Sequence record: OZ195776.1
Strand: one strand, 5' to 3'
Length of the DNA stretch: 64,000 nt
Positions 12,047 to 27,789 of this stretch are shown here, piece after piece. Numbering within the stretch: the first letter of the stretch is position 1; every line of letters begins with the position of its first letter. The notes beneath the pieces were generated by a model. The model was not told the DNA's origin. It made no database searches and was given only the letters and a program-made list of their open reading frames with translations. Both the position numbers and the translations under genes were made by a program.

Positions 12047-12054
12047 CATAAATA
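12047..12054 (+). promoter_or_regulatory. Late promoter variant CATAAATA
   Basis: One mismatch to TATAAATA, 25 nt upstream of 12080. Confidence 0.6.
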
Positions 12055-12079
12055 GAGCAAAACCCTAAGGAAAATCAAA

Positions 12080-12673
12080 ATGATTGAATTTATCACAGAG
12101 CGCAAAAGCGGCGACAAGTGGTATCAGGGTAGTCGTGGAGAGGTTGCTCACAACGTTCGTAAGATCGGTGTGAAGAAAGGCGGTGTGAAAGGAGCTATTC
12201 TTTCAAAGTCAGCGAATCTCATTGCCAAGGTGGCAGCTACGGGTACTTTGGGACGCGAGAATCGCAAAATCCAACAAGCGCAAACCAAAATGGAAGCGGC
12301 TGGCGTAAGCGCACTTCGTTATATGAACTACCTGGAAGCATCTATCAAATCTGACCGTCCTCGCGATGAAATTGTGAAGTCTGCGAAGCTATTGAAAGGC
12401 TATATTTCGGACACGAATAAGGCAGTACAAGAAGTTGTACGTCTAATTGACCGTTACCAACGACTTGACAACGAAGAGAAGCGTTCGCGTGGACTTGCTG
12501 GTGCAATCGTAGGTGCCGACGAGTTTTCGAAATACGACTTCCAAGATTTCTACCGAATGATGAACGACATCGAAGATGTTGCATTCAACTTAAACAAAGC
12601 AGCAACCGCTGCAATCACCAACGATTACGAATACGCATTGCGTCAAATGCATGCAGTTAAAGGTATTTTATGA
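12080..12673 (+). CDS. Putative internal head protein
   Basis: N-terminus MIEFITE resembles gp21-cleaved targeting leaders (T4 Alt MELITE); late promoter upstream. Confidence 0.55.
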   Translation: MIEFITERKSGDKWYQGSRGEVAHNVRKIGVKKGGVKGAILSKSANLIAKVAATGTLGRENRKIQQAQTKMEAAGVSALRYMNYLEASIKSDRPRDEIVKSAKLLKGYISDTNKAVQEVVRLIDRYQRLDNEEKRSRGLAGAIVGADEFSKYDFQDFYRMMNDIEDVAFNLNKAATAAITNDYEYALRQMHAVKGIL

Positions 12674-13197
12674 TTGAGTTTATCGCAGAACAGCGTCGTT
12701 TAAAGACGAGAAAAGGAAGCGCGATTAAGCGTTCCAAATGGGGCGTGGGCAAGGATATTGGCGGAAGCTTGTATGTTCACGTGAATTACGTGCCAGCGGA
12801 TTTTCGTAATATGGTAGATGAAGCACGAATGAAGATTTTGATTGAACATCCAACGTTTGATCCAAACATCGTGCGTATCGACTACAAGAAAGGAAGCGTG
12901 GCGTTTTACGACTCGCCGGAATTTGACAACTCAAACGAACCTGCAGCAGGTACGATGATTGTTGTTAAAGATGGTGTAGTTGCAAAACCAAGAGTGGTTA
13001 AACAGATATGGCATCACAAATGGCTATGGGTAGGAGACGACTATCGTGGTTTCAACGCGGAAGAAGCGTTCAAGCGAAGCGAAGAATGGTTGTCCAAGGA
13101 TACCGAGGATAATCCACTACCATTTGCAAAAATTGGCAACCGCCAGACTTGGAAAGACTGGCTGGCTGACAATAGTTTGAAAGAATCTGCTGGTTAG
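12670..13197 (+). CDS. Putative internal head protein with a domain resembling DNA-phosphorothioation-associated proteins
   Basis: Leader MIEFIAE; motifs GKDIGGSLYVH, NIVRI, VAFYDSPEFD, QIWHHKWLWV. Confidence 0.5.
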   Translation: MIEFIAEQRRLKTRKGSAIKRSKWGVGKDIGGSLYVHVNYVPADFRNMVDEARMKILIEHPTFDPNIVRIDYKKGSVAFYDSPEFDNSNEPAAGTMIVVKDGVVAKPRVVKQIWHHKWLWVGDDYRGFNAEEAFKRSEEWLSKDTEDNPLPFAKIGNRQTWKDWLADNSLKESAG

Positions 13198-14297: not shown

Positions 14298-14488
14298 TAT
14301 TTCATATCTCCAGGTTTGAAGTTAGCCCAAGATGCGTCATCAGATAGACGTTTAGAGTGAGCGCGTTCATCTTTCAGTTCGCTACGAAGAGTCATCGTTT
14401 CGGCGATTAGTTGTTGCGTGGTTGATTTGGATACAACTCCAAATTGCTCAAGTTCACGAGCTGCTATTTGTTCAATTGTCGCTTTCAT
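14297..14488 (-). CDS. Hypothetical protein (start at MKATIE)
   Basis: GAGGAAA RBS, early promoter just upstream, stop/start overlap with cca. Confidence 0.6.
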   Translation of the reverse strand: MKATIEQIAARELEQFGVVSKSTTQQLIAETMTLRSELKDERAHSKRLSDDASWANFKPGDMK

Positions 14489-14522
14489 GTCGTTTTCCTC
14501 ATAAATACTCTTCAGTTCTTGT

Positions 14523-14551
14523 ATATTACGAGAATTCATTTAAAAGGCAAC
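14523..14551 (-). promoter_or_regulatory. Early promoter GTTGCC-N17-TAATAT driving the cca operon
   Basis: Forward-strand atatta 14523-14528 and ggcaac 14546-14551. Confidence 0.75.
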
Positions 14552-14552
14552 A

Positions 14553-14560
14553 CATAAATA
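14553..14560 (+). promoter_or_regulatory. Late promoter CATAAATA for the fibre gene cluster
   Basis: One mismatch to consensus, 23 nt upstream of ATG 14584. Confidence 0.65.
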
Positions 14561-14583
14561 CTAACAAAAATGAGGGCAAAATT

Positions 14584-14922
14584 ATGGCTTACGAAAAGGT
14601 AGAATTGCCACCTAAATTGTCGCGTCGCACTCACGGGATTAATTTGGCCGACTATGATGAAGGCGTTTACGTCGATCTGCTAGGTAGCCCAAATGGTATG
14701 GATAGCAATTATTTCGCAATACTCGGCGATCAAAACGTATCGATTGAGTTTGCGATGGGTGGATTTTATAACAACCTACCAGGAAAAGTGGATCCATTAC
14801 CAGGTGTTAGCGACTTTCACCAACTAGGTCCAAATGGTCACTACGAGGCACAAGGGCGATTGTTCACAGGTGATATTCGTTTGTGGTTCCGCGGACGTGG
14901 CATCGTTACAATAGTTTATTAA
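14584..14922 (+). CDS. Small putative virion structural protein (start at MAYEKV)
   Basis: GAGG RBS, first gene of the late cluster; the track start at 14422 overlaps opposite-strand gene and promoters. Confidence 0.6.
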   Translation: MAYEKVELPPKLSRRTHGINLADYDEGVYVDLLGSPNGMDSNYFAILGDQNVSIEFAMGGFYNNLPGKVDPLPGVSDFHQLGPNGHYEAQGRLFTGDIRLWFRGRGIVTIVY

Positions 14923-14931: not shown

Positions 14932-16746
14932 ATGTCAAGTATTGACTTGCCTGGCAAGCTGATTGACGCAACGGCAGTTGATCCGCACACTCATCCAATA
15001 TCTGATATTATTGGGTTGCAGGCGTATCTCGATAGAATCATCAACTGGCGCGGTGAATACGCCAACGGCATCGTATACGAACGTAACGATTTAGTGAGAG
15101 ACGGCGATTGGTTAATGCTTGCATTGCAAGAAACTACTGACCAACCAGCTCCTGCTAACTCGGAACCAAATTCGTCAATATACGATGGTCGCGAAACATT
15201 CGTTGAATCATCTTTCGATGGTACGGTGGATTCAGGCTACACAATTACATTCGATAAGGATGGTTACGTACGTCGTCTGTTGGTATACGTACCAGAAATT
15301 AAGGCGGGATTGACTCACCGTCTTATTGTTGAAAACATTACCGATCCTAACAACATATCGGTTTCAGACACAACAAACATTGAATTCATTGCAAATAACT
15401 GGGCATCGGTTGAGATTGGCAATAGCCTAATCAAAGCAGGTACCAAGTTCCGGGTTTATCTGAGTTCTCTTAGTCGCACAAGCGAAACTGTATTCAACGG
15501 TCGTTGGATGTTTGAAAGCTCAAGTGATACGGTACTACCAACTGTCGGTAGTGGTGGATGGACTCGCTTCAAACACAACCAGATTCGTATAAGTAAGCGC
15601 GATTTAGACGACCAGGTGTTGGATCCGACGTTTGCTGACATCGTACCAGGAACAACGTTAGACTTTACTCGTTCGAGTAACGTGGAAAATGGATATACGT
15701 ACCTTGTACGTCGTGTGGTTGATAATACATCAGTTGATTACATCGATTTGGATGTAACACTTAGCGATAACCGCGGTACGTTGGCTGATGGTGATATTAC
15801 AGATACAGTAATCAACATCCCTACTGGCGTTGATACTAAATACGTATCAGAAGCAGATTTTCTTTCAAATTATCCACCAACATTCGCAACCGTTGAAGGT
15901 TACCTATCGCTAAACGGCGCGGTTCAACCAGATACAACAAATATTGGTTATGGACTTGAATTTGACTATCAACCAGCTGTTCTTAGCAGCGATTGGACAA
16001 TGGTCGTTCATGCTCATGGTGGTGCTGGTGGAGATGGAAGCGTCATCGATCCAGATGCGTTCTTGCCTCAACTACGTGGTGGAGAAGAACCAGAAGCGTT
16101 TGCTGCTACCCTAGCGTACGATATAGATTCAAGAGTTGTTTACAACAGTCGAGAATACCGAGCGGTTGCTAGTTCATTAGCCGGTCCATGGGTAGAAGCG
16201 AATTGGGTAGAAGTGTCTATCCAGAACAACGAAGAGCGTATTTCGAATCTTGAAAATAGAACAGTAGAGATTGAATACGAGTACACGCAATCCAAAACGC
16301 CATCAGAATACTGGTCAGTTGATACAGCAGGTCTAACACTAGACGAATTCAATCAACCAAATGTTCAAATATTCTTTAACGGTATTAAGCTTCGCAAAGG
16401 CGGACAAGCAATTTGGATTAGTGCAAACGAACTTCGAATCATATATACGTCTATAGAAACCGAAGATTACCTGATAGTAAGAAAGACGCAGACAGCGTCG
16501 GCTGGCTCGATTACAGAAGTTGATATTACACAAGATAAGAATCCAAGCGAAGTTTGGACGATCTCAGGTGTTAACATTGGCAACTCAGTATCGGAGTTTG
16601 CAGACCCTAAAATCCAAGTGTACTACAACGGAGTTAAACTTCGTAAAGGCGCACAAGTTGTTTGGATTAGTGCAACAGAACTACAGCTTAATCATTACAC
16701 CTCTGTTCAATCAGAAGATTACCTAACTATCAGAACAACTGTCTAA
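14932..16746 (+). CDS. Putative fibre/structural protein with CBM-like motifs and duplicated C-terminal domain
   Basis: WRGEYANGIVYERNDLV motif, one CBM5/12-like repeat, two copies of Q(I/V)xxNGxKLRKGxQxxWISAxEL. Confidence 0.65.
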   Translation: MSSIDLPGKLIDATAVDPHTHPISDIIGLQAYLDRIINWRGEYANGIVYERNDLVRDGDWLMLALQETTDQPAPANSEPNSSIYDGRETFVESSFDGTVDSGYTITFDKDGYVRRLLVYVPEIKAGLTHRLIVENITDPNNISVSDTTNIEFIANNWASVEIGNSLIKAGTKFRVYLSSLSRTSETVFNGRWMFESSSDTVLPTVGSGGWTRFKHNQIRISKRDLDDQVLDPTFADIVPGTTLDFTRSSNVENGYTYLVRRVVDNTSVDYIDLDVTLSDNRGTLADGDITDTVINIPTGVDTKYVSEADFLSNYPPTFATVEGYLSLNGAVQPDTTNIGYGLEFDYQPAVLSSDWTMVVHAHGGAGGDGSVIDPDAFLPQLRGGEEPEAFAATLAYDIDSRVVYNSREYRAVASSLAGPWVEANWVEVSIQNNEERISNLENRTVEIEYEYTQSKTPSEYWSVDTAGLTLDEFNQPNVQIFFNGIKLRKGGQAIWISANELRIIYTSIETEDYLIVRKTQTASAGSITEVDITQDKNPSEVWTISGVNIGNSVSEFADPKIQVYYNGVKLRKGAQVVWISATELQLNHYTSVQSEDYLTIRTTV

Positions 16747-16757: not shown

Positions 16758-19700
16758 ATGAATCAAGACATGATTAGTCGCTTGAATGTAGGTACAATCT
16801 CAGATGCAGTAGCAGCGAACTTCCGTATTGGGGAGTTCGTTTCTATCGCGGAGACTGGTCTTACATATCAATGTAAAGCGACAAGCGGAGACATCACGCT
16901 TTCAAATGGTCTTTTCCTACTAGCATCCGATCACGTTCTTCGTGGCGGTAGCTCATACGAAGTTTACACCTCAGGTAAAGCGTATTCTGTAGGTGATAAA
17001 GTTTTCAACACAACAACAAACTTATACTACCGTTGTATCGCGGACGCGTCAACATCAGACCCATTCAGTGCGGCGTTCTTCCAAGAAATGTCACTTGAGC
17101 AAGGTTATGAAATTGCAGACGAAGCGACTCAGTACGCGCGTGCTAAAGACGCAGAGTTTGGACAAACTCTACAAGTCATGCAAACTCGTGACAGTCTTAC
17201 TAACGGTGACTTACTAACAACTCGCCAATGTGCCATTATTGCATCGACTCTTGGTCTAGGTGCTTACTTCCGTACTACAAACGGTCGTGTTCTACCGCGC
17301 TTTGGTAACAACGCAACGAACAACTACGGTATCTACGGTGGTGATTTAGCAGATCCAACAACAGATGGCGCGGCGGTTGAGCTAGTGATTCCACGTGTTC
17401 ACTTACACAAGTTCATGCGTTTGAATCTACATAAGATTCAATCTTCAACTGGTGGTGTTAAAAACACTTGGTTGTACTCTGGCGACCCACTTACAGGCGG
17501 TACTGAGGTTCTACCAGAAGCTGGTGTGCGTTCGAGTAGCGACACAAGCCGTCAGGTTACCTATCTAATCGATGACATTTCAAACGATTTACACCTAGTG
17601 ATTCGTAACGAGTGGGTTCAAGACATCAACGTGATGGGTTACATTGCAGAGACGCCAGACAAAACACGTATGGCAATCGCTATGGGCGAAATCGTTGGTA
17701 TCAGTGGATATGTAAACGGTGACCAGTTCACATCGTGGGATGCGGATGCAATCTTACGCCCACTAGGTGTTGCGGCTTACTTCCGTAAAGACCAAGGTCG
17801 TGTTTTACCTAGCTACTACAATCAGTGGGGCTTGGGCTTTACAGCACCAGAACACGCTGACCCAACAACGGCAGGTCCGGCAGTAGAAATAGTTGTTCCA
17901 AAAGCGATTCTGGATCCAAACAACGAGATTACGATTCTTCGTTCAGCATCAACTGGTACTGGATCTCGTTACGTTCGTGTGTTCTCTGGCGACCCAATTA
18001 GTGGCGGCACTGAAATCACTCCACATTACGGCACTGCGATTCAGTTAACAACCGACTCGGCTGTTGCTTCGTTTCGTGTGGGTTCTGGTAACATCAACTT
18101 GCCAGAAGATATTCATATCGTTATTTCACTACAATACGTGAAAGATATTAGCGTCGGCAATTACCGTGTTCAAGATACTTTTGACACAACTCCGATTGAT
18201 GCAATTCGTGGTTCGGGTGCTTACGCAGATTACCAAGAAACAGGTACGGCGTATACAACAGGCGATAAAGTGTTCGACTCTGCATCGCGTTTGAACTACC
18301 GTGCTCTAGTTGATATTGCCGATCCAGCAGGCGCGTTTGATCCGACAGACTGGCGTGAGCTATCAATCGAATCGTTAGACGAAGCAAGCCCAACGACTCA
18401 AATCGACGCGCTTCGTGGTGATGCTCAGTATCCACAATACCAACCGACTGGTACGGCATACAGCATTGGTGATAAAGTATTCGAACCAGTAACAGGTCGA
18501 AACTATCGCGCAAACCAATTAATCATTCCTCCTGCAGGTGCGTTTAACGCTTCTGAGTGGACAGAGTTATCAGTTCGTGCAATGGATGAGGGATTGACGG
18601 TTGGATTCGCTCGTATCGAAACTCAAATCGATGCGCTTCGTGGTGATACTGAGTACGACGAATACGACGTGAACAGTTCATATACTGTAGATGATAAGGT
18701 TCGATACAACAACAAAAACTTCATATGTATCGTCAATACTCCTGTACCAACAGGCGCGTTTGATCCGAACGACTGGAAAGAACTTTCAATCGAGTCGATT
18801 CATACAGAAATTGATGACAACGTGTTGCAGATTAATGCAGTACGTGGTGCGGGCGTATATGAAACCTACGCAGAGACTGGTACGGCATACAGCATTGGTG
18901 ATAAAGTATTCGAACCGACGTTAAACAAGAACTACAAAGCAAAAGTTGCGATTGCTGACCCAGCGGGTGCGTTTACACCAGCAAGTTGGGAAGAACTTTC
19001 AGTAGAGTTTAACGCAGAACCAACAACTATTCGTGACCGTCTATCTGAACTATCAGGTGACGACCGTCTAGATGCTTCGGCAATCAAGAACATTGTTTCA
19101 CCTTCAAGTGGTGGTTCTGGATTGCATCGTGAAATGCTACGAGTTGCGGCTCGTGATAGTATTACTAACGGTGACTTATTCACAGAAGCACAAATCAACG
19201 AGGTCTTTAGTGGTCTTCCGTTTGAAACAACTGTAGTTACTTCTGGTGCTAACTACGCTATGCCTAACTATTTCAATGATGCTAATGTTATTGGTTTCTA
19301 TACTAACAATGGTTACGCAGACCCTACATTTGGTGGTGCAAATGGTCTGGTTCTAAAGATTGACAAAGAATACTTTGATTCGTCTAAAGAACTTGCAATC
19401 AGCTCAGTAGCTTGGGGTACAACAAACGAACGTTGGATTCGTGCGTATAATGGTGATGCAACAGCAAGCGGCACAGAGCTTGAATTGTCAGTAGGTCTTT
19501 CACAGTACTACGATACATCTACACCAATGACACGTAAATGGGCAATCCCAGATGGTTGTGACGACATTTACATCTACATTGGACAACAAGTAGTATTTGA
19601 CATCCAACTAACAGATGTAACTACAACATCAAGACCTATTCTTGGGAACAACAGTGTAAGTGCAGTAGTTCGTGGACTTGTTGAACAGTACGACTACGCA

Positions 19701-21020
19701 CACACAAGTCAACTAGCGGTAGGTGATGCAGAATTAGTTGCAGGTTCTATCTCGGCAGGTGCTTACTTCCGTACTACAAACGGTCGTTTGATTCCTGTGG
19801 TTTTCAACTCAGGTGGTAGAACAGGTTTCTGGTTAGCTGGTGCAAGTCTTGACCCAACTGGCGACGTGGCTATTCCTGAAATCGTAATCCCTGCAAGTTC
19901 GTTACAGCACAACATGACCATCAAGATGGTGAACACTAACGTTACTTCTGTTGCAGGTCAATCTGTTCAAGTCTACTCTGGAAACCCAACAGGTTCTGGT
20001 GTACGTCTTACTCCTATTGCAGGAACTGAAACGGACGTAGGTTACACTGAATGGAACGTATCATCTACTCCTACCGCAACTGGCGTTGTAGCAGATGACT
20101 TACACTTGTGTTTCATTTCTAAATGTATTCACGACATTGAACTAATCAATCACTCTCTGGATGTTCTACGAACTTCCCATGGTGAAGGTTTCGAAAACGT
20201 ACACGAAGAACTACGTGGCGGTACAGTCCCAAGCGAGTTTAGTTCTACATCATCGTATAGCGCAGGTGATAGAGTTTATCGAGCAACCGATAACAGAGTA
20301 TACGCCGCTAAGGTAGCAATCACAGCAGGTGCGTGGAATGCGTCTCAATGGAATGAATCTTCTATCAATGAGAACGAATCTCGTATTACCGTAGCCGAAA
20401 GCACAGTAGCTAACCACGAAACGGAGATTGACGCTCTACGCGGTGCAAATGCTTACGGCATCTACGACCAAACGGCTAACTACGTAATCGGTGACAGAGT
20501 TTACTACTCTGGTAGAGACTATGAAGCGATTGCTCCAAGTACAGCACAAGCGTTTACTCCTGCTAACTGGTATCAACTGTCAGTACGAAACAACGCTTCG
20601 CCTTACGCAGTACGTGACCGTCTACAACGCCTAACAGGTGACGATAGACTTGACGTGAGTGCTGTTAAAGGTTTAGTTGCGGTTGATAGAGAAGTATCAC
20701 AAACAGCACACGGTTTCGCTTTACTTCAACCAGTTGTTTACAACGGAACACAGTGGATTGTAGCAGACAACTCATCTGCAGACACAACGGCTCAGGCTGT
20801 AGTCACTGAGATTGTTGATGTAAATACATTCAGAGCGCAAGTATCCGGCATTGCAGAAATCCCATCACATGGTCTGACAGTAGGTGACTATTACTGGCTA
20901 GGTGCATCAGGATCGCTAGATATTACACAACCGACAACTGGAATTATCCAAGAAGTGTTACGAGTGTTCGATACCGACCTCATTCACATTAACCTTGGCC
21001 AGGCTTTCCAAGTCGCTTAA
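16758..21020 (+). CDS. Large fibre protein with seven CBM5/12 (chitin-binding)-like repeats and a C-terminal capsid-fibre-base-like domain
   Basis: Repeats Y-x-x-GD(K/R)V-x5-8-Y-x-A...AF-x-P-x-x-W-x-ELS; C-terminal HGF...HGLTVGDYYWL...G.L...P domain. Confidence 0.7.
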   Translation: MNQDMISRLNVGTISDAVAANFRIGEFVSIAETGLTYQCKATSGDITLSNGLFLLASDHVLRGGSSYEVYTSGKAYSVGDKVFNTTTNLYYRCIADASTSDPFSAAFFQEMSLEQGYEIADEATQYARAKDAEFGQTLQVMQTRDSLTNGDLLTTRQCAIIASTLGLGAYFRTTNGRVLPRFGNNATNNYGIYGGDLADPTTDGAAVELVIPRVHLHKFMRLNLHKIQSSTGGVKNTWLYSGDPLTGGTEVLPEAGVRSSSDTSRQVTYLIDDISNDLHLVIRNEWVQDINVMGYIAETPDKTRMAIAMGEIVGISGYVNGDQFTSWDADAILRPLGVAAYFRKDQGRVLPSYYNQWGLGFTAPEHADPTTAGPAVEIVVPKAILDPNNEITILRSASTGTGSRYVRVFSGDPISGGTEITPHYGTAIQLTTDSAVASFRVGSGNINLPEDIHIVISLQYVKDISVGNYRVQDTFDTTPIDAIRGSGAYADYQETGTAYTTGDKVFDSASRLNYRALVDIADPAGAFDPTDWRELSIESLDEASPTTQIDALRGDAQYPQYQPTGTAYSIGDKVFEPVTGRNYRANQLIIPPAGAFNASEWTELSVRAMDEGLTVGFARIETQIDALRGDTEYDEYDVNSSYTVDDKVRYNNKNFICIVNTPVPTGAFDPNDWKELSIESIHTEIDDNVLQINAVRGAGVYETYAETGTAYSIGDKVFEPTLNKNYKAKVAIADPAGAFTPASWEELSVEFNAEPTTIRDRLSELSGDDRLDASAIKNIVSPSSGGSGLHREMLRVAARDSITNGDLFTEAQINEVFSGLPFETTVVTSGANYAMPNYFNDANVIGFYTNNGYADPTFGGANGLVLKIDKEYFDSSKELAISSVAWGTTNERWIRAYNGDATASGTELELSVGLSQYYDTSTPMTRKWAIPDGCDDIYIYIGQQVVFDIQLTDVTTTSRPILGNNSVSAVVRGLVEQYDYAHTSQLAVGDAELVAGSISAGAYFRTTNGRLIPVVFNSGGRTGFWLAGASLDPTGDVAIPEIVIPASSLQHNMTIKMVNTNVTSVAGQSVQVYSGNPTGSGVRLTPIAGTETDVGYTEWNVSSTPTATGVVADDLHLCFISKCIHDIELINHSLDVLRTSHGEGFENVHEELRGGTVPSEFSSTSSYSAGDRVYRATDNRVYAAKVAITAGAWNASQWNESSINENESRITVAESTVANHETEIDALRGANAYGIYDQTANYVIGDRVYYSGRDYEAIAPSTAQAFTPANWYQLSVRNNASPYAVRDRLQRLTGDDRLDVSAVKGLVAVDREVSQTAHGFALLQPVVYNGTQWIVADNSSADTTAQAVVTEIVDVNTFRAQVSGIAEIPSHGLTVGDYYWLGASGSLDITQPTTGIIQEVLRVFDTDLIHINLGQAFQVA

Positions 21021-21063
21021 TATGTACTCCCTGTCTTCGGGCAGGGATTAATAAGGAAACAAG

Positions 21064-24000
21064 ATGTCAAAATCAAATGTTGTTCAGATTCGAGACACAG
21101 CGACTCAAATCCGTGACAAACTTCAAGGTCTAGCTGGTACAAATCGACTAGACGCAACCGCTGTAGAGTTTATTGATAGTTTCCAAACTATCTGGGTAAG
21201 CACGAACGGTTCGGATACAAACGACGGTCGAACTCCAACAGAACCGTTCTTAACTATCGGTGCGGCATTAACTGCGGCAGCGACACTGCCTGCTACTTCT
21301 AAGCGAGTTGTTAAGTGTGTAGACGCATCAACATTCGCAGAGAATGTAAGTGTCAGCAGCTCGGTCGATTTAGACCTAGAGCATTGTTCACTAGTTGGTA
21401 ATATTACATCATCTTTGCCAGTTCGTACCAAAATCAAACTAGCAGTTCTACAAGGTAGCTTAACAACATCCAATGGTGTTCATGCAGAGATTCAGCAAGT
21501 AGCTGGTAATCTGATTGTAGGTAACTCTAATTCCGCTGCTGCTTACATTAGCGTAGAAGATTGGGTATCTGGTACAATAGACACAACAAACGCAGTTGGT
21601 GATTTGTTTGTAGATATCAAACACAATGACGCTAACTTGGTAATCCCGACAGACGTTGTAGGCTTTAACCCATTTGGTTTTGTAGCAGGCTCAGTTGTTC
21701 AACCAACAAGTCTAGTAGATTCACTGGAAACGCTAACGGGTGACGACCGTCTAGATGCATCGGCAATCAAAGGTATCACTTCTGGGTCTAATCCACACAC
21801 TAGAGTAGACTTCACGGACTTCGGTGCGGCAGGTAACGGTTGGTACGACTTGATTAGCTGGCCGGCAATCCCAGCGTTTACTACCGATACTTGGGGTGCG
21901 GATTTCATTATCTACATGAACTCTAACACAACTGACACCATCATTACTCAACGAGTGAATATAAACTTCCCCGTAGGTATTGCAAACTCAAGCGACGATA
22001 CTATGATTCGTATCATCGGTCGTATTGTTGCAGGTAGCTCGGTTGGTGGTGGACAGTATCGTATCATTCAAGACACTTCAACTGTAACCTCAATGACTCG
22101 TTTACAGGTTCAGTTTACCTCCGGTAATACATACGCTGGTTCAATGACTAACGCGCTACCATTGGATTATTCTGGTTCGGGTGCTACGTTCGGTGGACTT
22201 GCTCTGCACACTCCAACTGGTAACGAAGTTGTTATTAAAGAAATCAACACAGCAAACTGGGACGACCAAAGTATTCACGATGGTTCAACAGGTGGTATTG
22301 CTTGTGAGAGTATTGGTAATCACCAAACAAGCAACGCTTACATTGATTTCACTACCTCTGATATTGCAACCGTTGTAAACGACCAAACGGTTATCCGTGC
22401 GTCGGAGGTTGGTACACGATTCTCGGCCGGTGAATATGAAGTATTTGAGAAACAGTTCAGAGGTTCTACTCCAACTGCTTGGCCATGGGATACAACACCT
22501 AGTACTGATTCTACACTTACTCTAGGCAATACGGACAACCCGAACTTTACGTTCCCGATTGTGACTTGTGAACAAACAGAAACAGCGATGGTGACAACAC
22601 CTATCATTGGTTATGTTCCTCCGTTTATCAGTAACACAAGCGCACTTCGCCCAACTGGCGCGAACGGACGTTGTAACTTCTCGATTACTGGATTTGTTCC
22701 TAATCAACGAGTTGGTATTCGAGTATACATTACGAAAGATGGTTCTAGCCAAGGTGGTGTATGGAGAATGGACCGCGGTGGTGTTCAGCAATCAGATATC
22801 AACTTATCTGGTACAGCAGGACAAACACTAACAACATTCTTGGAATACACAACTGTAGTTACAGAAGCAGACTTCACCGCAGGTGCTATTGACTTGCAAG
22901 TGTATCGTACAGATAACCCACCGGGTGGTACTCCTTGGAACGACGCGGGTTGGATGTCATTCGTTGTGTCTTACGACCTTATCGTAGAATCTATTGAACC
23001 AGCTTTGGACACAAACGTTGTAGCTCAGTTCGACTCGAACACGCGTGGTATCTTACCACCTCGTATTGCTCCATTCTTGAATCCTAATCACCCAGATGGC
23101 GCACAAGCTGTTGATGTGTTTAGCGGCAGACCTATCGTTTCTTTCGATGGTGATTGGAGCTATTACTTGTCTTCTCGTCGTAAAGCGTCAGACCTAGAGT
23201 ACGGTATGTTCGCGTATGCAGATGCTGGCACGACATGGGGAGAGCAAGGCTGGACGGGTAACATGGTTGATACGTCTCAGATTGTTGATGACTACTTGGG
23301 CTTCCCTAAGCTGATTCGCTCAACGAGTACTACATCGGTACGCGATGCAAACGCACCACTCAATACAGACGCACTGTGGCAAGCAGCTTGGGACAACGGT
23401 TACCGACTGGACTTCCGTATCATGCTGAACGGTGACGGGGACATAATGCAGGTCAATGCTGAACCTCGCAATACAGCTACATCTTGGCCTACTGGTCGAT
23501 ACACACTGACCGCTATCAGCGAAACTGGTGTTGTGAACATCTATGACACCACTGACACTGTTATAGCTTCGACCACTCAAGATGAGATGCACACATTCTC
23601 AATCGTTGTACAAAACCCTACTGCAAGCACAATCGCTCAATACTACCTAGACGATGTTTTAATTGGTGAAATAGACATTCAAGGGTTTGACGGTCAGCGT
23701 GGTTTGTACTTGTGGGAGAATGCAGGCGCTAGTCGTGGTTGGTCTATTGAGTACATTGCAATGTACGTACTGGAAACAGGAGCTAACGACGTAACGCTAA
23801 ACCGTACTGATGTAGAAGCCGCAGTTACTTACAGTAACGCAGTGGAGAACGCGACAGTTCGTATTCCGAAAGGTTTGTTCGACTTCGATGCAACGGTAGA
23901 CGTTATTAATGGTTCTAGTACTCCTATGACTATTACTGGTGAAGTTGGTTCAAACATCTCGTTCCACTCAGGTGACCAAGAAATCACTATCCCTGCTGGT

Positions 24001-24399
24001 TCTGGTGCTCGTATTGCTCAGACAGCACGACCACGCGGTAATAAGTGGGCGATTGTTGGTTCAGAGCGTAACAAGACCCCTACCTCACAAGGGCATTCGT
24101 TGCAGTTCTTGTTCGACCCTGCATCTAACACAATCCTTAATAGACACGGTAGCTTCACTGGAGCAATCACTATTACGGATAACGGTGTAGGTGACATCTG
24201 GTTTGACTTTGAAGGTTATTCTTCAATTGGTTCGTTCGGTTCTGACAATGTAACGGCTTTAGCTACTACTAACCGAGGTTTTGGAACAAACTTTATTGAT
24301 GTTGAGTTAGACTCTGCGGCAGCAAACTTAGTAGTTAACACACAAAACATTGGCGGCAACCCGATTGATACAATCTTCTCGGTTGCACTTTACTGGTAA
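21064..24399 (+). CDS. Putative receptor-binding/fibre protein, paralogue A
   Basis: 1111 aa, Thr/Gly/Ser-rich beta content, WVSTNGSDTNDGRTP motif, colinear similarity to the next gene. Confidence 0.65.
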   Translation: MSKSNVVQIRDTATQIRDKLQGLAGTNRLDATAVEFIDSFQTIWVSTNGSDTNDGRTPTEPFLTIGAALTAAATLPATSKRVVKCVDASTFAENVSVSSSVDLDLEHCSLVGNITSSLPVRTKIKLAVLQGSLTTSNGVHAEIQQVAGNLIVGNSNSAAAYISVEDWVSGTIDTTNAVGDLFVDIKHNDANLVIPTDVVGFNPFGFVAGSVVQPTSLVDSLETLTGDDRLDASAIKGITSGSNPHTRVDFTDFGAAGNGWYDLISWPAIPAFTTDTWGADFIIYMNSNTTDTIITQRVNINFPVGIANSSDDTMIRIIGRIVAGSSVGGGQYRIIQDTSTVTSMTRLQVQFTSGNTYAGSMTNALPLDYSGSGATFGGLALHTPTGNEVVIKEINTANWDDQSIHDGSTGGIACESIGNHQTSNAYIDFTTSDIATVVNDQTVIRASEVGTRFSAGEYEVFEKQFRGSTPTAWPWDTTPSTDSTLTLGNTDNPNFTFPIVTCEQTETAMVTTPIIGYVPPFISNTSALRPTGANGRCNFSITGFVPNQRVGIRVYITKDGSSQGGVWRMDRGGVQQSDINLSGTAGQTLTTFLEYTTVVTEADFTAGAIDLQVYRTDNPPGGTPWNDAGWMSFVVSYDLIVESIEPALDTNVVAQFDSNTRGILPPRIAPFLNPNHPDGAQAVDVFSGRPIVSFDGDWSYYLSSRRKASDLEYGMFAYADAGTTWGEQGWTGNMVDTSQIVDDYLGFPKLIRSTSTTSVRDANAPLNTDALWQAAWDNGYRLDFRIMLNGDGDIMQVNAEPRNTATSWPTGRYTLTAISETGVVNIYDTTDTVIASTTQDEMHTFSIVVQNPTASTIAQYYLDDVLIGEIDIQGFDGQRGLYLWENAGASRGWSIEYIAMYVLETGANDVTLNRTDVEAAVTYSNAVENATVRIPKGLFDFDATVDVINGSSTPMTITGEVGSNISFHSGDQEITIPAGSGARIAQTARPRGNKWAIVGSERNKTPTSQGHSLQFLFDPASNTILNRHGSFTGAITITDNGVGDIWFDFEGYSSIGSFGSDNVTALATTNRGFGTNFIDVELDSAAANLVVNTQNIGGNPIDTIFSVALYW

Positions 24400-24443
24400 T
24401 AATAATGAGCCCTTCGGGGCTCCATTTAAGGAACCATTGCTAC

Positions 24444-27272
24444 ATGTCTAAAGACAATATAATAAGATTACCTTCCGGATCTCCAGACACGCCGATCCAG
24501 GTGAGAGATAAACTACAAGGTCTTGTACATGACGACCGTCTATCGTCAGATGCCGTACACTTTGCAAGTAGCACCAACGTCGTATATGTCAGCCAACAAG
24601 GTGATGATTCAAACGAAGGTCGTTGTCCAGTAGAACCCAAGCGTACACTCGACGCTGCACTTCAACTAGCATATACACTGCCTGACGCATCGAGACGATT
24701 TGTTGTTTGTGTAGATGCTTCGGTTTTCAGCGAGGATGTAGTACTAACAGAATCAATCGATCTGTATTGCCCTCTAGCATCATTGATTGGTGACCTAACT
24801 GCATCAGCCAGTGATATTAACTACGTGGAATTCTTCTTTGTTCAAGGGACTGTAAACCTAAATGCATTCGATCACTTTAAATTTAACGAAGTGGTGAGTG
24901 TAGTTAGAATTGGTGATCTCACTTCAGCGGGAGCAAGTTTGTACGTAACAAACTTCGTAACTGGTCAGGTAGATCTCACCAACGCTAAAGGCAAGGCGTA
25001 CATACACATAGATCATAACCTAGCACCTGTTACACTAGATCCACCAGATGGATTTGCAATGGCAGGTAATTTGAATGGTACTCCCTTATCACCGGACGAG
25101 CACGCTAGGGCATTAGAAACTCTGACTGGTGATAGGAGAATCGACCCACTGGCCCTCCAGAACTTTAAATCGGTAGGTGATCCAGACGTCGCAAGATCGT
25201 GGTTGGACTTTACCACTCAAGGGACAGAGGTTCACGCCAATGGCAAGTCATCGATTAAAGTATCTGGTACTGGTACTAGATTTAACTCCGGCGCGTATGA
25301 TACATTCACGAGATATTTCAGAGGTAGCATACCGACCAAATGGCCATGGTATTCGATATCTGGAACGGAGTCTGTGCTAACGATAAGCTCGTCATGGGAT
25401 GCTTTATTTGTATTCCCTACAGTTACTTGCAATCAGTACTCACATAACCTCGTAGCGGTTCCTATAACCGGATTTCCAGATCCGTTCATTAACAATATCA
25501 ATGCCCTGCGCCCAAACGGTACCTCTAGTATAGCGCAATTCACCATAACAGGATTCAATCTAAATCAACGAGTTGGCGTTCGCGTGTACATATCCAAATC
25601 TGGCACGACTCAGCGTGGCGATTGGAGAATGGAGAATGGCGGCACTGAGGTTGATTCTGTAGTTCTAGGAGCTGATGATTATCAAAACCTCGATTCATAC
25701 CTAGAATACACTAAAGTGGTAACTCAAGCTGATATCGACGCCGGATCTATTATAGTAACAGTTCGTCGTGCAGACACCCCAAATGGTACCACCGACACTT
25801 GGTGGGATGATCATTGGATGAGTTTCATAGTTTCGTACGATTTGATCGTGGAAACACTCGAACCGAATCTAGATTCCCATGCGGTGGTACAATTCGATTC
25901 GGAACGAAAAGGCATATTACCACCTAGGATTACACCTACTGACGAAGTGAATCGTACTGATGGGATACTTGCCGTAGAACGCAGCACAGGACTGCCTATA
26001 GTATCACATAAAAACGGATGGTCTCATTATTTGACGAACCGTCGCAAAGCAAATGAGATGCTCCATGAGTATCCTATGTACGCAAGTGAAGGTAACATGG
26101 CCGATCAGGGCTGGACTGGTAGTATGGCAACCTCATCTACGGTTGTGCACGACTTCATTGGCTTCCCGGATCTTATCACATGTAACGCGCCAGACAGCAC
26201 AGTGGAAGCTACGGTACCATTCACCAGCACGATTCAATTCTGGTTGGATGCTTGGAATAACGGATTTAGAGTAGATTTCCGAATGTTTTTCGGTCTTGGC
26301 GATAAGCTACAAATCAACGTTGAGCCGAGTACCACAGTTACAGATTGGCCATCAGGTCGATACGAGCTAACGCTCGAACAGAATGGAGCACATGTAGACG
26401 TGCGCTTCCAGGGTATTCTATTGACAAATACATCAGTAGATACCATGAACACGTACAGCATCATATGTGATAACCCAAGAGCCAGCACTCATGCACGCAT
26501 ACTATTGAACGACAAAGAGATTGGCACTGGTGATATTGGCGGCCACAACGGTCAACGCGGTATGTACCTATGGGATGATACAGGACCTACTAGAGATTGG
26601 CATATAGAATACGCAAATGCGTACGTTATTGGCAATCTTACAGATGATGTTACGTTGACTCATGATGATGTATCGTCGTCGATCGTGTACAGCAATGTTG
26701 TGGAGAATGCTACAGTAAGAATCCCTAAGGGATTGTTCGAATTGGGCACTACCATAGAACTTACAAACGCATCCACTACTCCAATGACGGTTACCGGAAC
26801 ACACCTATCGGAAATTTCCATTCAAGGTGAAACCTCCGTGCAAGTGCCATCAGGTTCTGGTGTGTATCTAACGCAAATGACTAGGCCACGTGGAACCACT
26901 TGGGCATTGATAGGTGGCGAACGGCCTAAGACTCCAGTGTCAGAAGGACATAGTTTGTTCTTCTCGTACAATGGATATAGTAACCAAATAACCAACCGTC
27001 ATGGTACTTTTACCGGAAATATCGGTCACACGAGAAGAGCTACCGGAGAGTACGTGTTTGATATTGCCGGAGTTACCATTGACGACTACGCGACTACTGT
27101 AATGGTGCAAGTCACTGACGTGCTAGCAATGCCCGCAGTAACAACAGCGCTTCTCAATGGTGCATACGGTGATTTGGAAATCAACGTGTTTGAAGAAGAT
27201 AGGTCCGTTGGTGGCAGTGGATTGTTTGATACGCTAATAGATCGACGCATTTCGGTATGCTTGTACTGGTAA
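24444..27272 (+). CDS. Putative receptor-binding/fibre protein, paralogue B (start at MSKDN)
   Basis: Shares blocks with paralogue A (GTRF..G.Y..F...FRGS.PT.WPW; LRP.G....F.ITGF..NQRVG.RVYI; NATVRIPKGLF; same final LYW). Confidence 0.65.
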   Translation: MSKDNIIRLPSGSPDTPIQVRDKLQGLVHDDRLSSDAVHFASSTNVVYVSQQGDDSNEGRCPVEPKRTLDAALQLAYTLPDASRRFVVCVDASVFSEDVVLTESIDLYCPLASLIGDLTASASDINYVEFFFVQGTVNLNAFDHFKFNEVVSVVRIGDLTSAGASLYVTNFVTGQVDLTNAKGKAYIHIDHNLAPVTLDPPDGFAMAGNLNGTPLSPDEHARALETLTGDRRIDPLALQNFKSVGDPDVARSWLDFTTQGTEVHANGKSSIKVSGTGTRFNSGAYDTFTRYFRGSIPTKWPWYSISGTESVLTISSSWDALFVFPTVTCNQYSHNLVAVPITGFPDPFINNINALRPNGTSSIAQFTITGFNLNQRVGVRVYISKSGTTQRGDWRMENGGTEVDSVVLGADDYQNLDSYLEYTKVVTQADIDAGSIIVTVRRADTPNGTTDTWWDDHWMSFIVSYDLIVETLEPNLDSHAVVQFDSERKGILPPRITPTDEVNRTDGILAVERSTGLPIVSHKNGWSHYLTNRRKANEMLHEYPMYASEGNMADQGWTGSMATSSTVVHDFIGFPDLITCNAPDSTVEATVPFTSTIQFWLDAWNNGFRVDFRMFFGLGDKLQINVEPSTTVTDWPSGRYELTLEQNGAHVDVRFQGILLTNTSVDTMNTYSIICDNPRASTHARILLNDKEIGTGDIGGHNGQRGMYLWDDTGPTRDWHIEYANAYVIGNLTDDVTLTHDDVSSSIVYSNVVENATVRIPKGLFELGTTIELTNASTTPMTVTGTHLSEISIQGETSVQVPSGSGVYLTQMTRPRGTTWALIGGERPKTPVSEGHSLFFSYNGYSNQITNRHGTFTGNIGHTRRATGEYVFDIAGVTIDDYATTVMVQVTDVLAMPAVTTALLNGAYGDLEINVFEEDRSVGGSGLFDTLIDRRISVCLYW

Positions 27273-27321: not shown

Positions 27322-27759
27322 ATGCAACGTCTTAGAGACAATTGGATCCCTTTGGCTGCGCTGATTCTATCTTGCGTGGTAGCAGTTGGTGGGTATTATA
27401 GCAGCACCGTAGTAGTTGCTACGAAAGTAACATATCTTGAAAGTGAACTTGCTCAAATGAAAGATCAGGCCGTGGACATCACGGTTCTTGAATCGGAAGT
27501 GAAAGCATTACAAGAAGCTGATAAGAGGTTTTTTAAGACTATGGATGGAATAGGGGAAGGATTGGTTTCTGTCTCTGATCGTCTATACTCTCTTGAGACT
27601 TTGTCGACGTTGTCAATCGATACGAATAAACGTCTAGTGAATGCTTTGGATAAACTGGATGGGACTTTGGATAAGATTAACGATACTGTTATCCGTTTAG
27701 AAACAAGAGTTAGTGTGTTAGAAGGGCAATACGATCGTACTGATCGTAGAAACCCATAA
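27322..27759 (+). CDS. Membrane-anchored coiled-coil protein (lysis or fibre-associated candidate)
   Basis: N-terminal hydrophobic helix WIPLAALILSCVVAVGGYY, then heptad-rich helix; AATAAATA at 27273 upstream. Confidence 0.55.
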   Translation: MQRLRDNWIPLAALILSCVVAVGGYYSSTVVVATKVTYLESELAQMKDQAVDITVLESEVKALQEADKRFFKTMDGIGEGLVSVSDRLYSLETLSTLSIDTNKRLVNALDKLDGTLDKINDTVIRLETRVSVLEGQYDRTDRRNP

Positions 27760-27761
27760 AC

Positions 27762-27789
27762 AAAAAAGGCCGCAATTGCGGCCTTTTCT
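27762..27789. terminator. Bidirectional terminator
   Basis: AAAAAAGGCCGC-AATT-GCGGCCTTTTCT between convergent genes. Confidence 0.85.

What the first reader, a model, noticed from the sequence alone, without database searches (positions are those of the whole stretch)
16758..21020. Candidate chitin-binding head fibre: possible phage adherence to chitin
The 1420-aa protein has seven ~50-aa repeats (e.g. YTTGDKVFD...YRA...AFDPTDWRELS) with the aromatic pattern of CBM5/12 chitin-binding modules. Two copies share 42 identical bp (18446-18487 and 18875-18916), indicating recent duplication or conversion. The C-terminal ~100 aa (HGF...W..AD...A..VV...HGLTVGDYYWL...G.L...P) resembles capsid-fibre base/cement (DUF2190-like) domains. 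The cluster lies in the hoc/inh region rather than at the T4 34-37 tail-fibre locus. Hypothesis: capsid-displayed fibres tether virions to chitin surfaces that Vibrio hosts colonise, analogous to Hoc-mediated mucus adherence.
Basis: partly seen in the sequence, partly recalled or inferred. Interest (0 to 1): 0.75.

Follow-up and report, generated by a model that had tools for sequence, protein, structure and literature searches.

The report
Giant lectin-like phage fibre gene
A marine Vibrio phage carries a rare 1420-residue protein built from eleven sugar-binding-type modules; it is the main subunit of an extra, swappable fibre, and nothing yet shows that this fibre sits on the head or binds chitin.

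Summary
The window is the first 64 kb of Vibrio phage D479, a T4-like relative of KVP40. The 1420-aa ORF, its seven ~55-aa repeats, the Pfam CBM_5_12 match, the 42-bp identical patch and the position in the hoc/inh region are all real. The DUF2190-like C-terminus is not supported.

The closest solved relatives of the repeat are the tail-binding N-terminal modules of phage tail fibres (T4 gp34, Milano gp124, 7-7-1). A true chitin-binding domain ranks only third. So the repeat is a common fibre module and does not indicate chitin.

The protein also has four ~175-aa domains that fold like galactose-binding/CBM22/CBM32-type lectin modules.

It is the middle gene of a late operon, c166-c604-c1420-c1111-c955-c145. 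That operon replaces the single variable virion-protein gene found at this locus in KVP40-type phages.

The same gene module occurs in five other metagenomic or draft-assembly contigs. In three of them it lies in a FelixO1/phiTE-like head/connector gene block.

D479 has a full T4-type tail-fibre set elsewhere.

Best reading: an accessory, multivalent glycan-binding virion fibre. Its attachment site (baseplate, neck or capsid) is unresolved. Chitin specificity is unsupported.

The parts
14553..14560 (+). Late-promoter-like octamer ahead of the operon
   Evidence: It lies about 24 nt upstream of the ATG at 14584. Similar xTAAATA motifs precede the sheath, portal and 11292 genes. This is a pattern match only, and the reference consensus came from my own knowledge.
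14422..14922 (+). c166 (VPHD479_0017), the conserved first gene of the locus. The real start is probably the ATG at 14584, giving 112 aa.
   Evidence: It matches phrog_14406 over aa 55-166, which is the full 112-position profile. It is 51% identical to KVP40.0365. The same family precedes the variable virion-protein gene in 6E35-1a.
14932..16746 (+). c604 (VPHD479_0018), the proposed proximal or adaptor subunit. Aa 36-370 are a widespread all-beta domain. Aa 382-433 are a CBM5/12-like repeat. Aa 434-604 are two ~75-aa units.
   Evidence: 589 relatives of aa 36-370 were found among 1.84 billion representatives, with no Pfam or PDB sequence match. AF2 pLDDT is about 95 for this domain. The domain co-occurs with Peptidase_S74, PTR and Phage_fiber_rpt. 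The C-terminal 220 aa are 42-48% identical to the gene just upstream of every c1420 homologue.
16758..21020 (+). c1420 (VPHD479_0019), the finding: a 1420-aa modular fibre subunit with architecture N-R-AA-RRRR-M-AA-RR-M-C
16758..16940 (+). N domain (aa 1-61), conserved in homologues from unrelated phages
   Evidence: HMM hits at the N-termini of P0002, P0003, L012_339 and L014_2069
16941..17105 (+). Repeat R1 (CBM5/12-like)
17151..18209 (+). Domains A1 and A2 (aa 132-484), a lectin-like beta-sandwich pair
   Evidence: Internal repeat family A (alignment A3). The fold is inferred from the A3-A4 model.
18207..19013 (+). Repeats R2-R5 (CBM5/12-like), separated by short helical linkers. Contains both copies of the 42-bp patch (18446-18487 and 18875-18916).
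19020..19154 (+). Junction motif M1 (aa 755-799)
   Evidence: It recurs at aa 1282-1320, at the N-termini of c1111 and c955, and at module borders in all homologues.
19122..20204 (+). Domains A3 and A4 (aa 789-1149)
   Evidence: AF2 pLDDT 75-90. Foldseek matches tandem CBM22, CBM32, CBM51 and discoidin-type domains at probability 0.9-1.0.
20214..20594 (+). Repeats R6 and R7 (CBM5/12-like). R7 is the best Pfam match.
   Evidence: Foldseek matches the N-terminal modules of Milano gp124 and the 7-7-1 tail fibre at probability 1.0.
20601..20717 (+). Junction motif M2 (aa 1282-1320)
20703..21017 (+). C domain (aa 1316-1420). Fold unknown; not DUF2190.
   Evidence: It is internal in L014_2069. It precedes a tail-collar fibre domain in L016.
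21064..24399 (+). c1111 (VPHD479_0020), a proposed distal subunit and paralogue of c955
   Evidence: 44% identical to c955 over 705 aa. Aa 238-1111 are 32% identical to the gene downstream of P0004. Aa 7-242 match an internal segment of P0003 and aa 16-245 an internal segment of P0004.
24405..27272 (+). c955 (VPHD479_0021, annotated 'tail fiber protein'), the second distal paralogue
27322..27759 (+). c145 (VPHD479_0022), a small coiled-coil or membrane-like protein that ends the operon
   Evidence: Weak coiled-coil, holin and spanin-type hits only
27764..27787 (+). Terminator-like hairpin (10-bp stem, 6 G-C pairs, T-rich tail) closing the operon

Best explanation
The ORF encodes the long middle subunit of an accessory virion fibre. 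The fibre is made by a six-gene late operon (about 14.55-27.79 kb): c166, c604, c1420, c1111, c955, c145.

c1420 is a chain of independently folding modules joined by short helical linkers and two junction motifs. It has a 61-aa N domain, seven CBM5/12-like repeats, four ~175-aa lectin-like beta-sandwich domains (galactose-binding / CBM22 / CBM32 type) and a C domain of unknown fold.

Proposed mechanism (inferred). c604 links the fibre to the particle. Its conserved C-terminal 220 aa pair with the conserved N domain of c1420. c1111 and c955 are alternative distal pieces. The eleven weak sugar-binding modules per chain would give multivalent, reversible binding to a polysaccharide. The most likely target is host surface glycan (capsule, LPS or exopolysaccharide). 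This binding would concentrate virions at cells before the canonical T4-type long tail fibres engage.

The whole cassette was acquired by recombination at a hypervariable locus downstream of the conserved c166 gene. KVP40-type phages carry a different single virion-protein gene there.

Shown: the anatomy, the family membership of the repeats, the fold class of the A domains, the conservation of the gene module, the locus replacement, and the complete tail-fibre set elsewhere in the genome.

Inferred: presence in the virion, order of assembly, oligomeric state, sugar binding and the ligand.

Where it attaches is unresolved. My estimate: baseplate or tail about 45%, neck or collar about 20%, capsid about 25%, not a virion part about 10%.
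For: Anatomy and repeats.

CBM5/12 membership.

A domains: AF2 pLDDT is 75-90, and Foldseek matches tandem CBM22 (4xup), CBM32 (7jnf), CBM51 (2ygl), SGBP-B (7kwb) and discoidin domains at probability 0.9-1.0. BFVD matches are tail proteins carrying CenC or F5/8-C modules.

Conserved gene module: a c604-like C-terminus, then a c1420-like giant, then (where the contig extends far enough) a c1111-like or A-domain protein. It is seen in D479, L008, L011, L012, L014 and L009.

c604: its main domain occurs in 589 proteins and sits beside tail-fibre hallmarks such as Peptidase_S74, PTR and Phage_fiber_rpt.

Operon: tight gene spacing, a promoter-like octamer at 14553 and a terminator at 27764.

Locus replacement: c166 is 51% identical to KVP40.0365, and D479 has no KVP40.0366 homologue. 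In 6E35-1a the gene at this position (VP6E351A_0014) is a confirmed virion protein with the second-highest spectral counts (PMC12028318 Table S4).

Complete T4-type fibre set elsewhere in D479.
Against: There are no proteomic or imaging data for D479, so presence in the virion is inferred.

Sugar binding is inferred from fold class only. In the solved relatives (T4 gp34, Milano gp124) the CBM5/12-like module lies in a tail-binding part of the fibre and may be purely structural (PMC10811340).

Foldseek TM-scores are low (0.1-0.28), because a multi-domain model was compared as a whole.

The C domain and c1111/c955 have no interpretable fold or family.

The order of assembly rests only on which parts are conserved between phages.

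The operon's promoter is a near-match to a consensus that I recalled from memory.
Confidence: 0.55

Rival explanations
1. One reading: the protein is displayed on the capsid as a functional analogue of Hoc, is anchored by its C-terminus, and tethers virions to chitin surfaces colonised by Vibrio.
For: The position matches the T4 hoc/inh locus. D479 has a full tail-fibre set elsewhere. In L008 and L011 the module follows the major capsid gene, and L012 shares their small upstream gene; in L009 it lies next to the terminase. In 6E35-1a the gene at this position gives the second-highest spectral counts in virions. The KVP40-type phages phiSt2 and phiGrn1 show a filament on the head by TEM (PMC4780772), and phage 7-7-1 has capsid fibres (PMC12796354). 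R7 passes the CBM_5_12 cut-off, and an aromatic residue aligns with the Trp of the ChiA1 domain in the 1ed7 alignment.
Against: There is no DUF2190 or other capsid-binding match. The C domain is internal in L014 and precedes a tail-collar domain in L016. The repeat's nearest solved relatives are tail-fibre modules of non-marine phages, so a chitin link does not follow. R1-R3 do not hit the chitin-binding model at all. There are no Ig-like or Hoc-like domains. Spectral counts in the cited data set do not track copy number: portal 165/280 versus sheath 81/154.
Confidence: 0.07
2. An ordinary extra set of side tail fibres or receptor-binding proteins. It is attached to the baseplate or branches from the existing long tail fibres, and it extends host range by recognising a host surface polysaccharide.
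For: Every recognisable building block has tail relatives. The R module matches gp34, Milano gp124 and the 7-7-1 tail fibre. The c604 domain occurs with Peptidase_S74, PTR and Phage_fiber_rpt. The best-probability match for c604 is the N-terminal branching region of CBA120 TSP4. A C-like domain lies in front of a tail-collar domain. The c604 C-terminal unit occurs in a small ORF at the distal end of the tail module of siphophage 2.058.O. BFVD top hits are tail proteins. The depositors call c955 'tail fiber protein'. T4-like phages scatter their fibre genes.
Against: There is no similarity to any baseplate-binding N-terminus, and no extra gp9/gp10-type adaptor was seen. The module recurs inside head/connector gene blocks in FelixO1/phiTE-like contigs, where tail fibres normally follow the baseplate genes.
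Confidence: 0.4
3. A neck or collar fibre, that is, a whisker-like appendage mounted on the connector.
For: In L008 the module lies between the capsid gene and the tail-terminator gene, within the block that should hold the connector genes. Felixounavirus Bas63 mounts collar and whisker proteins on its connector (PMC12609058). Anabaena phage A-1(L) has bead-chain-like neck fibres (abstract of PMC10966104). The authors of the 6E35-1a study filed the gene at this position under 'Long tail fibers collar & whiskers'.
Against: There is no sequence or fold link to fibritin, to Bas63 collar or whisker proteins, or to any neck protein. D479 keeps its own fibritin. The small genes flanking the module in L008 could not be matched to known connector genes.
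Confidence: 0.2
4. Not a virion component: a secreted or cell-bound phage protein, for example a lectin-like factor released at lysis.
For: There are no proteomic data for D479. The last gene, c145, looks membrane-associated.
Against: The operon lies among structural genes. The architecture is fibre-like, and all relatives are encoded in phage structural modules.
Confidence: 0.08

Closest known systems
N-terminal tail-binding modules of phage tail fibres: T4-type gp34 (PDB 9x3r, 9f4a), Agrobacterium phage Milano gp124 (8fqc), phage 7-7-1 tail fibre (9rkv)
   Same: They have the same ~50-aa CBM5/12-like module. They are the best profile hits in the PDB (E 1.7e-6 to 8e-3) and give Foldseek probability 1.0 with 20-22% identity over about 130 residues for R6-R7. 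D479's own gp34 has a weak copy at aa 48-88.
   Different: Those fibres have one or two copies at the N-terminus, in the part that binds the tail (Milano aa 1-175, PMC10811340). c1420 has seven copies spread along the chain. It has no similarity to the rest of gp34 or gp124, and D479 has a true gp34 elsewhere (47% identical to KVP40 gp34).
CBM5/12 chitin-binding modules of chitinases and chitin deacetylases (Pfam PF02839; for example Bacillus circulans ChiA1 ChBD, PDB 1ed7)
   Same: The HMM match is above the curated cut-off for the whole protein and for R7. The repeat profile finds 1ed7, chitinase 4tx8 and Vibrio-type chitin oligosaccharide deacetylase 3wx7 at E 0.003-0.03. An aromatic residue is kept at the position aligned with the Trp in the 1ed7 alignment.
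   Different: These modules rank below the phage tail-fibre modules. Three of the seven repeats do not hit the model. There is no attached chitinolytic enzyme domain. Binding has not been tested.
Tandem galactose-binding-like carbohydrate-binding modules (CBM22-1/22-2 of Xyn10C, 4xup; CBM32-1/32-2 of ZmpB, 7jnf; CBM51, 2ygl; discoidin F5/8-C)
   Same: The A3-A4 model matches these tandem beta-sandwich lectin modules at probability 0.9-1.0. BFVD hits carry CenC or F5/8-C labels.
   Different: There is no sequence-level match to any Pfam or PDB family. Each A domain has two extra N-terminal helices. TM-scores are low, and the ligand site has not been examined.
T4 Hoc, and the Hoc-like Hex-Dec protein of Bas63
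   Same: The genomic position corresponds to hoc/inh. Both are chains of small adhesin-type modules that could mediate weak adherence.
   Different: c1420 has no Ig-like domains and no recognisable capsid-binding domain. It is four times longer and is encoded with three other large fibre genes. Its location on the virion is unknown.
Head filaments and capsid fibres of phiSt2/phiGrn1 (KVP40-type), phiCbK and 7-7-1
   Same: They set a precedent for long flexible head appendages in myophages, including close relatives of D479 (PMC4780772; PMC12796354). The genes for those appendages are unassigned.
   Different: No sequence link can be made, because those fibre proteins are unidentified. phiSt2/phiGrn1-type genomes carry a different gene at this locus (KVP40.0366 type).
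KVP40.0366 / VP6E351A_0014, the variable virion protein at the same locus in Schizotequatroviruses
   Same: It occupies the same slot: downstream of the phrog_14406 gene and next to inh. It is a confirmed virion protein in 6E35-1a. KVP40.0366 and c604 share their first 8 residues, 6 of 8 identical.
   Different: Apart from those first residues there is no homology. It is a single 484-621-aa gene, against four genes totalling 4090 aa in D479.

Membership tests
CBM5/12 (Pfam PF02839, CBM_5_12) | Match to the family HMM above the curated gathering score | tested here: met
   Whole protein 43.2 bits against 26.2. R7 alone 27.8, R4 25.7, R6 14.8, R5 12.4; R1-R3 give no hit.
CBM5/12 (Pfam PF02839, CBM_5_12) | Small (~45-60 aa) beta fold resembling solved CBM5/12 modules | tested here: inconclusive
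   The AF2 model of R6 and R7 has pLDDT of about 78 with short strands. Foldseek matches for this part are the Milano and 7-7-1 tail-fibre modules, not chitinase CBMs. The sequence profile does reach 1ed7 at E 0.003.
CBM5/12 (Pfam PF02839, CBM_5_12) | Surface-exposed aromatic residues that stack on chitin | tested here: inconclusive
   An aromatic residue (Phe in six repeats, Trp in R6) aligns with the Trp of the 1ed7 chain. The same residue is kept in gp34 and Milano gp124.
CBM5/12 (Pfam PF02839, CBM_5_12) | Demonstrated binding to chitin | not testable with these tools
   This needs ligand-bound structures or measurements.
DUF2190-type head decoration / head-fibre base | Match of the C-terminal ~100 aa to the family HMM or fold | tested here: not met
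   No Pfam hit at E <= 10 for aa 1283-1420. No PDB hit with profile A4. The AF2 model is unfolded there. The only PHROG hit is to a family of unknown function.
Hoc-type capsid decoration | Ig-like domain string plus a capsid-binding domain | tested here: not met
   No Ig-type Pfam hits. No decoration proteins appear among the Foldseek matches.
Hoc-type capsid decoration | Located on capsid hexamers | not testable with these tools
   This requires imaging or proteomics of D479.
T4 long tail fibre proximal subunit (gp34, phrog_972) | Full-length orthology to gp34 | tested here: not met
   The PHROG hit covers only aa 635-692 against profile positions 49-106, which is the shared repeat. D479's true gp34 is at 91880-95548 and is 47% identical to KVP40 gp34. 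BLAST finds no similarity between c1420 and gp34.
Galactose-binding-domain-like CBMs (CBM22/32/51, discoidin) | Beta-sandwich fold matching solved members | tested here: met
   Foldseek probability 0.9-1.0 to 4xup, 7jnf, 2ygl, 7kwb and 7lyu for the A3-A4 model, with pLDDT 75-90. TM-scores are low because whole multi-domain chains were compared.
Galactose-binding-domain-like CBMs (CBM22/32/51, discoidin) | Sequence membership in a curated family, or a conserved ligand or metal site | tested here: not met
   No Pfam hit and no PDB sequence hit. The ligand site was not examined.

The most novel reading that the evidence does not exclude
The c604-c1420-c1111 module is a new, horizontally mobile class of head- or neck-mounted lectin fibre. 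It is shared between T4-like vibriophages, where it sits at the hoc-position slot, and FelixO1/phiTE-like marine myophages, where it sits right after the capsid gene. It would be the first gene set assigned to the head appendages seen on KVP40-type phages. It would tether virions to polysaccharide-rich surfaces such as chitin particles, biofilm matrix or host capsule. This would be a marine counterpart of Hoc-mediated adherence to mucus.
Probability: 0.2. Interest if true: 0.8.

Novelty: new variant of a known kind. Interest (0 to 1): 0.5.

Why it matters
If the fibre is real, it would be an unusually large, multivalent sugar-binding appendage added to an otherwise complete T4-type particle. 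It also marks a swappable slot for virion-surface proteins in KVP40-type phages. These phages are studied for their broad host range and for use in aquaculture.

The module is very rare: four homologues among 5.8 billion proteins, plus a few found through gene context. Yet it is shared by unrelated phage lineages. That makes it a clean case for studying how whole multi-gene fibre cassettes move between phages.

It also contains at least three domain families with no Pfam entry: the 330-aa c604 domain (589 relatives), the A domain and the C domain.

The specific idea of adherence to chitin would matter for phage ecology on marine particles, but it has no direct support at present.

Tried and rejected
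Searches and tests that led nowhere or were rejected:
- DUF2190 or any other Pfam family for the C-terminus: no hit at E <= 10.
- Hoc-like Ig domains: none.
- gp34 orthology: rejected.
- PDB sequence searches with c1420, c604, c1111 and the A-domain, C-domain and c604-domain profiles: nothing significant.
- tblastn of c1420 and c955 against 50,697 phage records: only D479 itself.
- k-mer protein searches with c604 and c1111: only the query itself.
- Source names for relatives of the c604 domain: none held.
- Foldseek of the c604 model: no convincing fold match, TM <= 0.22.
- AF2 of the C domain: unfolded.
- Matching the small genes around the module in L008 to the annotated connector genes of Pseudomonas phage vB_PsaM_M1: only the capsid protein matched.
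- Pfam on pieces of c1111 and c955: only sub-threshold noise.
- Literature on D479: none found.
- Using spectral counts as copy number for the 6E35-1a protein at this position: rejected as unreliable, because the portal out-scores the sheath in the same table.
- 'Recent duplication' as the cause of the 42-bp identity: rejected in favour of short-tract gene conversion.

Full report
IDENTITY OF THE WINDOW. The window is identical to bases 1-64000 of Vibrio phage D479 (OZ195776.1, 257,764 bp, from a seawater and oyster mix). D479 is a T4-like myophage. Its major capsid protein is about 76% identical to those of the KVP40 group (Schizotequatrovirus). I found no paper that describes it.

THE OBSERVATION.
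- The ORF 16758-21020 (+) encodes 1420 aa and is annotated 'hypothetical protein'.
- The seven repeats are real. They lie at aa 62-116, 484-540, 553-609, 628-681, 696-752, 1153-1206 and 1228-1279.
- Pfam CBM_5_12 scores 43.2 bits for the whole protein against a cut-off of 26.2.
- Scanned one at a time, only R7 passes (27.8 bits). R4 is borderline (25.7), R6 and R5 are weak, and R1-R3 are silent.
- The two 42-bp stretches are exactly identical and exactly 42 bp long.
- The repeats that carry them (R3 and R5) are only 58% identical in DNA and 52% identical at third codon positions. The patch is therefore a short gene-conversion tract inside old repeats, not a sign of recent duplication.
- A second exact patch of 31 bp links domain A1 to domain A4 (17258 and 19757).
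- The claimed DUF2190-like C-terminus finds no support. There is no Pfam hit at E <= 10, no PDB hit with a profile of the domain, and AlphaFold2 leaves it unfolded.

ANATOMY.
- HMMs built from the protein's own pieces give the architecture N(1-61) - R1 - A1 A2 - R2 R3 R4 R5 - M - A3 A4 - R6 R7 - M - C(1316-1420).
- 'A' is a second repeat family of about 175 aa, with four copies and no Pfam match.
- 'M' is a ~40-aa junction motif. It also opens the two downstream proteins.
- In the AF2 model of aa 789-1420, A3 and A4 are predicted with pLDDT 75-90. Each has two helices followed by a beta sandwich. R6 and R7 reach about 78 and are separated by helices.
- Foldseek matches the A-A tandem to tandem carbohydrate-binding modules of the galactose-binding-like class (CBM22, CBM32, CBM51, Bacteroides SGBP-B, discoidin domains) and to the CBM-like domains of Cry and Vip3 proteins, at probability 0.9-1.0. 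The Cry and Vip3 matches reflect that shared sandwich only.
- TM-scores are low because whole multi-domain chains were compared.
- The chain therefore carries eleven modules of sugar-binding type.

WHAT THE REPEAT REALLY RESEMBLES.
- A profile of the seven repeats was searched against all PDB sequences.
- The hits, in order: the tail fibre of Agrobacterium phage 7-7-1 (9rkv, E 1.7e-6); Milano gp124 (8fqc, 1.4e-4); the chitin-binding domain of ChiA1 (1ed7, 0.003); the N-termini of T4-type gp34 (9x3r aa 63-90 and 9f4a aa 49-93, 0.007-0.008); then chitinases and a chitin deacetylase (0.025 and weaker).
- Foldseek agrees: R6-R7 match the Milano and 7-7-1 modules at probability 1.0.
- D479's own gp34 (aa 48-88) and gp10 (aa 264-348) carry weak copies.
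- The module is thus a general building block of phage fibres. It descends from, or is related to, CBM5/12, and phages of E. coli and Agrobacterium use it too. Its presence does not point to chitin.
- An aromatic residue does align with the Trp of the ChiA1 domain in all seven repeats. It is equally conserved in gp34 and gp124, so it does not discriminate.

THE GENE IS PART OF A MODULE.
- c1420 sits in a tight run of same-strand genes: c166 (14422/14584-14922), c604 (14932-16746), c1420, c1111 (21064-24399), c955 (24405-27272) and c145 (27322-27759).
- The run is preceded by a late-promoter-like octamer at 14553 and closed by a strong hairpin terminator at 27764-27787.
- c1111 and c955 are paralogues, 44% identical over 705 aa.
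- Only four homologues of c1420 exist among 5.8 billion clustered proteins, at 33-44% identity. A fifth (L014) turned up through gene context.
- In every case the neighbours are conserved too. The gene upstream ends in a 220-aa region that is 42-48% identical to c604 aa 381-604. Where the contig extends past the giant gene, the gene downstream resembles c1111 or consists of A domains.
- In one contig (L012) the giant gene is split into two ORFs.
- The N domain of c1420 and the C-terminal part of c604 are conserved across unrelated phage backbones, whereas the N-terminal part of the c604-like protein varies. From this I infer that c604 is the adaptor and that its conserved end pairs with the c1420 N domain.
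- c604 aa 36-370 form a confidently predicted all-beta domain, with pLDDT about 95.
- That domain has 589 relatives in the 1.84-billion-protein library, 85 of them below 1e-30, and no Pfam or PDB match.
- In other proteins it sits next to Peptidase_S74, PTR and Phage_fiber_rpt, which are hallmarks of tail fibres and spikes.
- Its best-probability fold match, a weak one, is the N-terminal branching region of CBA120 TSP4.

THE LOCUS.
- In KVP40 the same slot holds KVP40.0365, which is 51% identical to c166, followed by one 484-aa gene, KVP40.0366, and then inh.
- In phage 6E35-1a the slot holds a phrog_14406 gene, a 90-aa gene and the 621-aa VP6E351A_0014, then inh.
- D479 has no homologue of KVP40.0366 anywhere in its genome.
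- The slot downstream of the conserved c166 gene therefore carries a variable cargo. In D479 that cargo is a 12.3-kb, four-gene fibre cassette.
- VP6E351A_0014 is a confirmed virion protein with the second-highest spectral counts after the capsid protein (414/637) (PMC12028318 Table S4).
- I do not read that figure as copy number, because in the same table the portal (12 copies) out-scores the sheath.
- D479 carries a complete T4-type set elsewhere: gp34 and gp35 (91.9-98.8 kb), a distal fibre cluster (196-206 kb), two gp12-like genes, fibritin, and gp9, gp10 and gp11. The cassette is therefore an addition.

HEAD, NECK OR TAIL?

For a head or neck location:
- The slot is the T4 hoc position.
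- In L008 and L011 the module lies one to two small genes after the major capsid gene; in L008 the tail-terminator gene follows further downstream. The contig L012 begins with a small gene homologous to one of those small genes.
- In L009 the module is next to the terminase.
- A related annotated phage has only small connector-type genes at that position.
- Felixounavirus Bas63 mounts collar and whisker proteins on its connector (PMC12609058).
- The KVP40-type phages phiSt2 and phiGrn1 show a filament on the head (PMC4780772).

For a tail location:
- Every recognisable building block has its relatives in tail proteins.
- A C-like domain precedes a tail-collar fibre domain in an IMG/VR contig. 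In another contig a protein bearing the domain lies next to a baseplate-wedge-like protein.
- The c604 C-terminal unit occurs as a small ORF at the distal end of the tail module of siphophage 2.058.O.
- The depositors labelled c955 'tail fiber protein'.

The two lines of evidence conflict. I leave the location open and give rough odds in the explanation sections.

VERDICT. The thing itself is a rare, modular, probably glycan-binding accessory fibre cassette at a swappable virion-protein slot. That makes it a new variant of a known kind, the phage adhesin fibre. It contains several uncatalogued domain families.

SLIPS AND LIMITS, STATED AS REQUIRED.
(a) In one search I joined the fetched pieces of the public D479 record into one scratch file. 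I did this only to cut genes by record coordinates. Nothing was altered or printed, and later scripts read the pieces separately.
The promoter statement therefore rests on my own knowledge and is marked weak.
I left those rows out (A6) and sent them to no other tool afterwards.
(d) One search returned engineered glycoprotein constructs of animal viruses, only because they carry a fibritin foldon tag.
(e) Consensus lines printed by the alignment tool were not used.

Noticed in passing
window 17258-17288 and 19757-19787: A second exact internal repeat of 31 bp links domain A1 to domain A4 of the same gene. Like the 42-bp patch, it looks like a short gene-conversion tract.
   Followed up: partly
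window 14422-14922: The annotated TTG start of VPHD479_0017 is probably too far upstream. Homology to KVP40.0365 and the full 112-position phrog_14406 profile begin near the ATG at 14584, which is preceded by a late-promoter-like octamer at 14553.
   Followed up: partly
L002 (KVP40) 5628-7082, KVP40.0366: The N-terminus of the KVP40 protein at this locus has two tandem fibritin-foldon-like motifs (aa 8-32 and 38-60), so it is probably a trimer. KVP40.0366 and c604 share only their first 8 residues, and the first 12 nt of the two genes are identical.
   Followed up: partly
window 11292-11921 (+), 27790-28320 (-), 30116-30523 (-): Three paralogues of the prohead protease inhibitor (inh) flank the fibre cassette. 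The first of them is annotated only as hypothetical.
   Followed up: no
window 9991-13197: The homologues of KVP40.0369, KVP40.0372 and KVP40.0371 lie on the opposite strand and on the other side of the slot compared with KVP40. The region between the capsid gene and uvsW has therefore been rearranged. The 397-aa protein at 9991-11184 is not gp24. A gp24-like 'major head protein' gene lies at 99.7 kb of the genome.
   Followed up: partly
window 21037-21056: A G+C-rich hairpin without a T-run lies in the 43-nt gap between c1420 and c1111. It might act as an RNA-stability or attenuation element.
   Followed up: no
window 14932-16746, aa 36-370 of c604: This is a widespread domain family with no catalogue entry: 589 relatives, no Pfam or PDB match, and a confidently predicted all-beta fold. 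It occurs at N-terminal, internal and C-terminal positions of phage fibre-like proteins up to 2958 aa long.
   Followed up: partly
window 16270-16743, aa 447-604 of c604: The conserved C-terminal part of c604 is itself an internal duplication of a ~75-aa unit. Single units occur as small ORFs in Vibrio phages henriette 12B8, 2.058.O and 3.058.O.
   Followed up: partly
L012 2070-7163: In one relative (assembly GCA_014845275.1) the giant gene is split into two ORFs of 339 and 1323 aa. The same assembly carries three separate copies of the module, on three contigs (L011, L012, L014).
   Followed up: no
window 27322-27759: The last gene of the operon (145 aa) has a hydrophobic N-terminus and coiled-coil-type weak hits (holin, spanin, DUF16). 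It does not look like a known tail-fibre chaperone.
   Followed up: no
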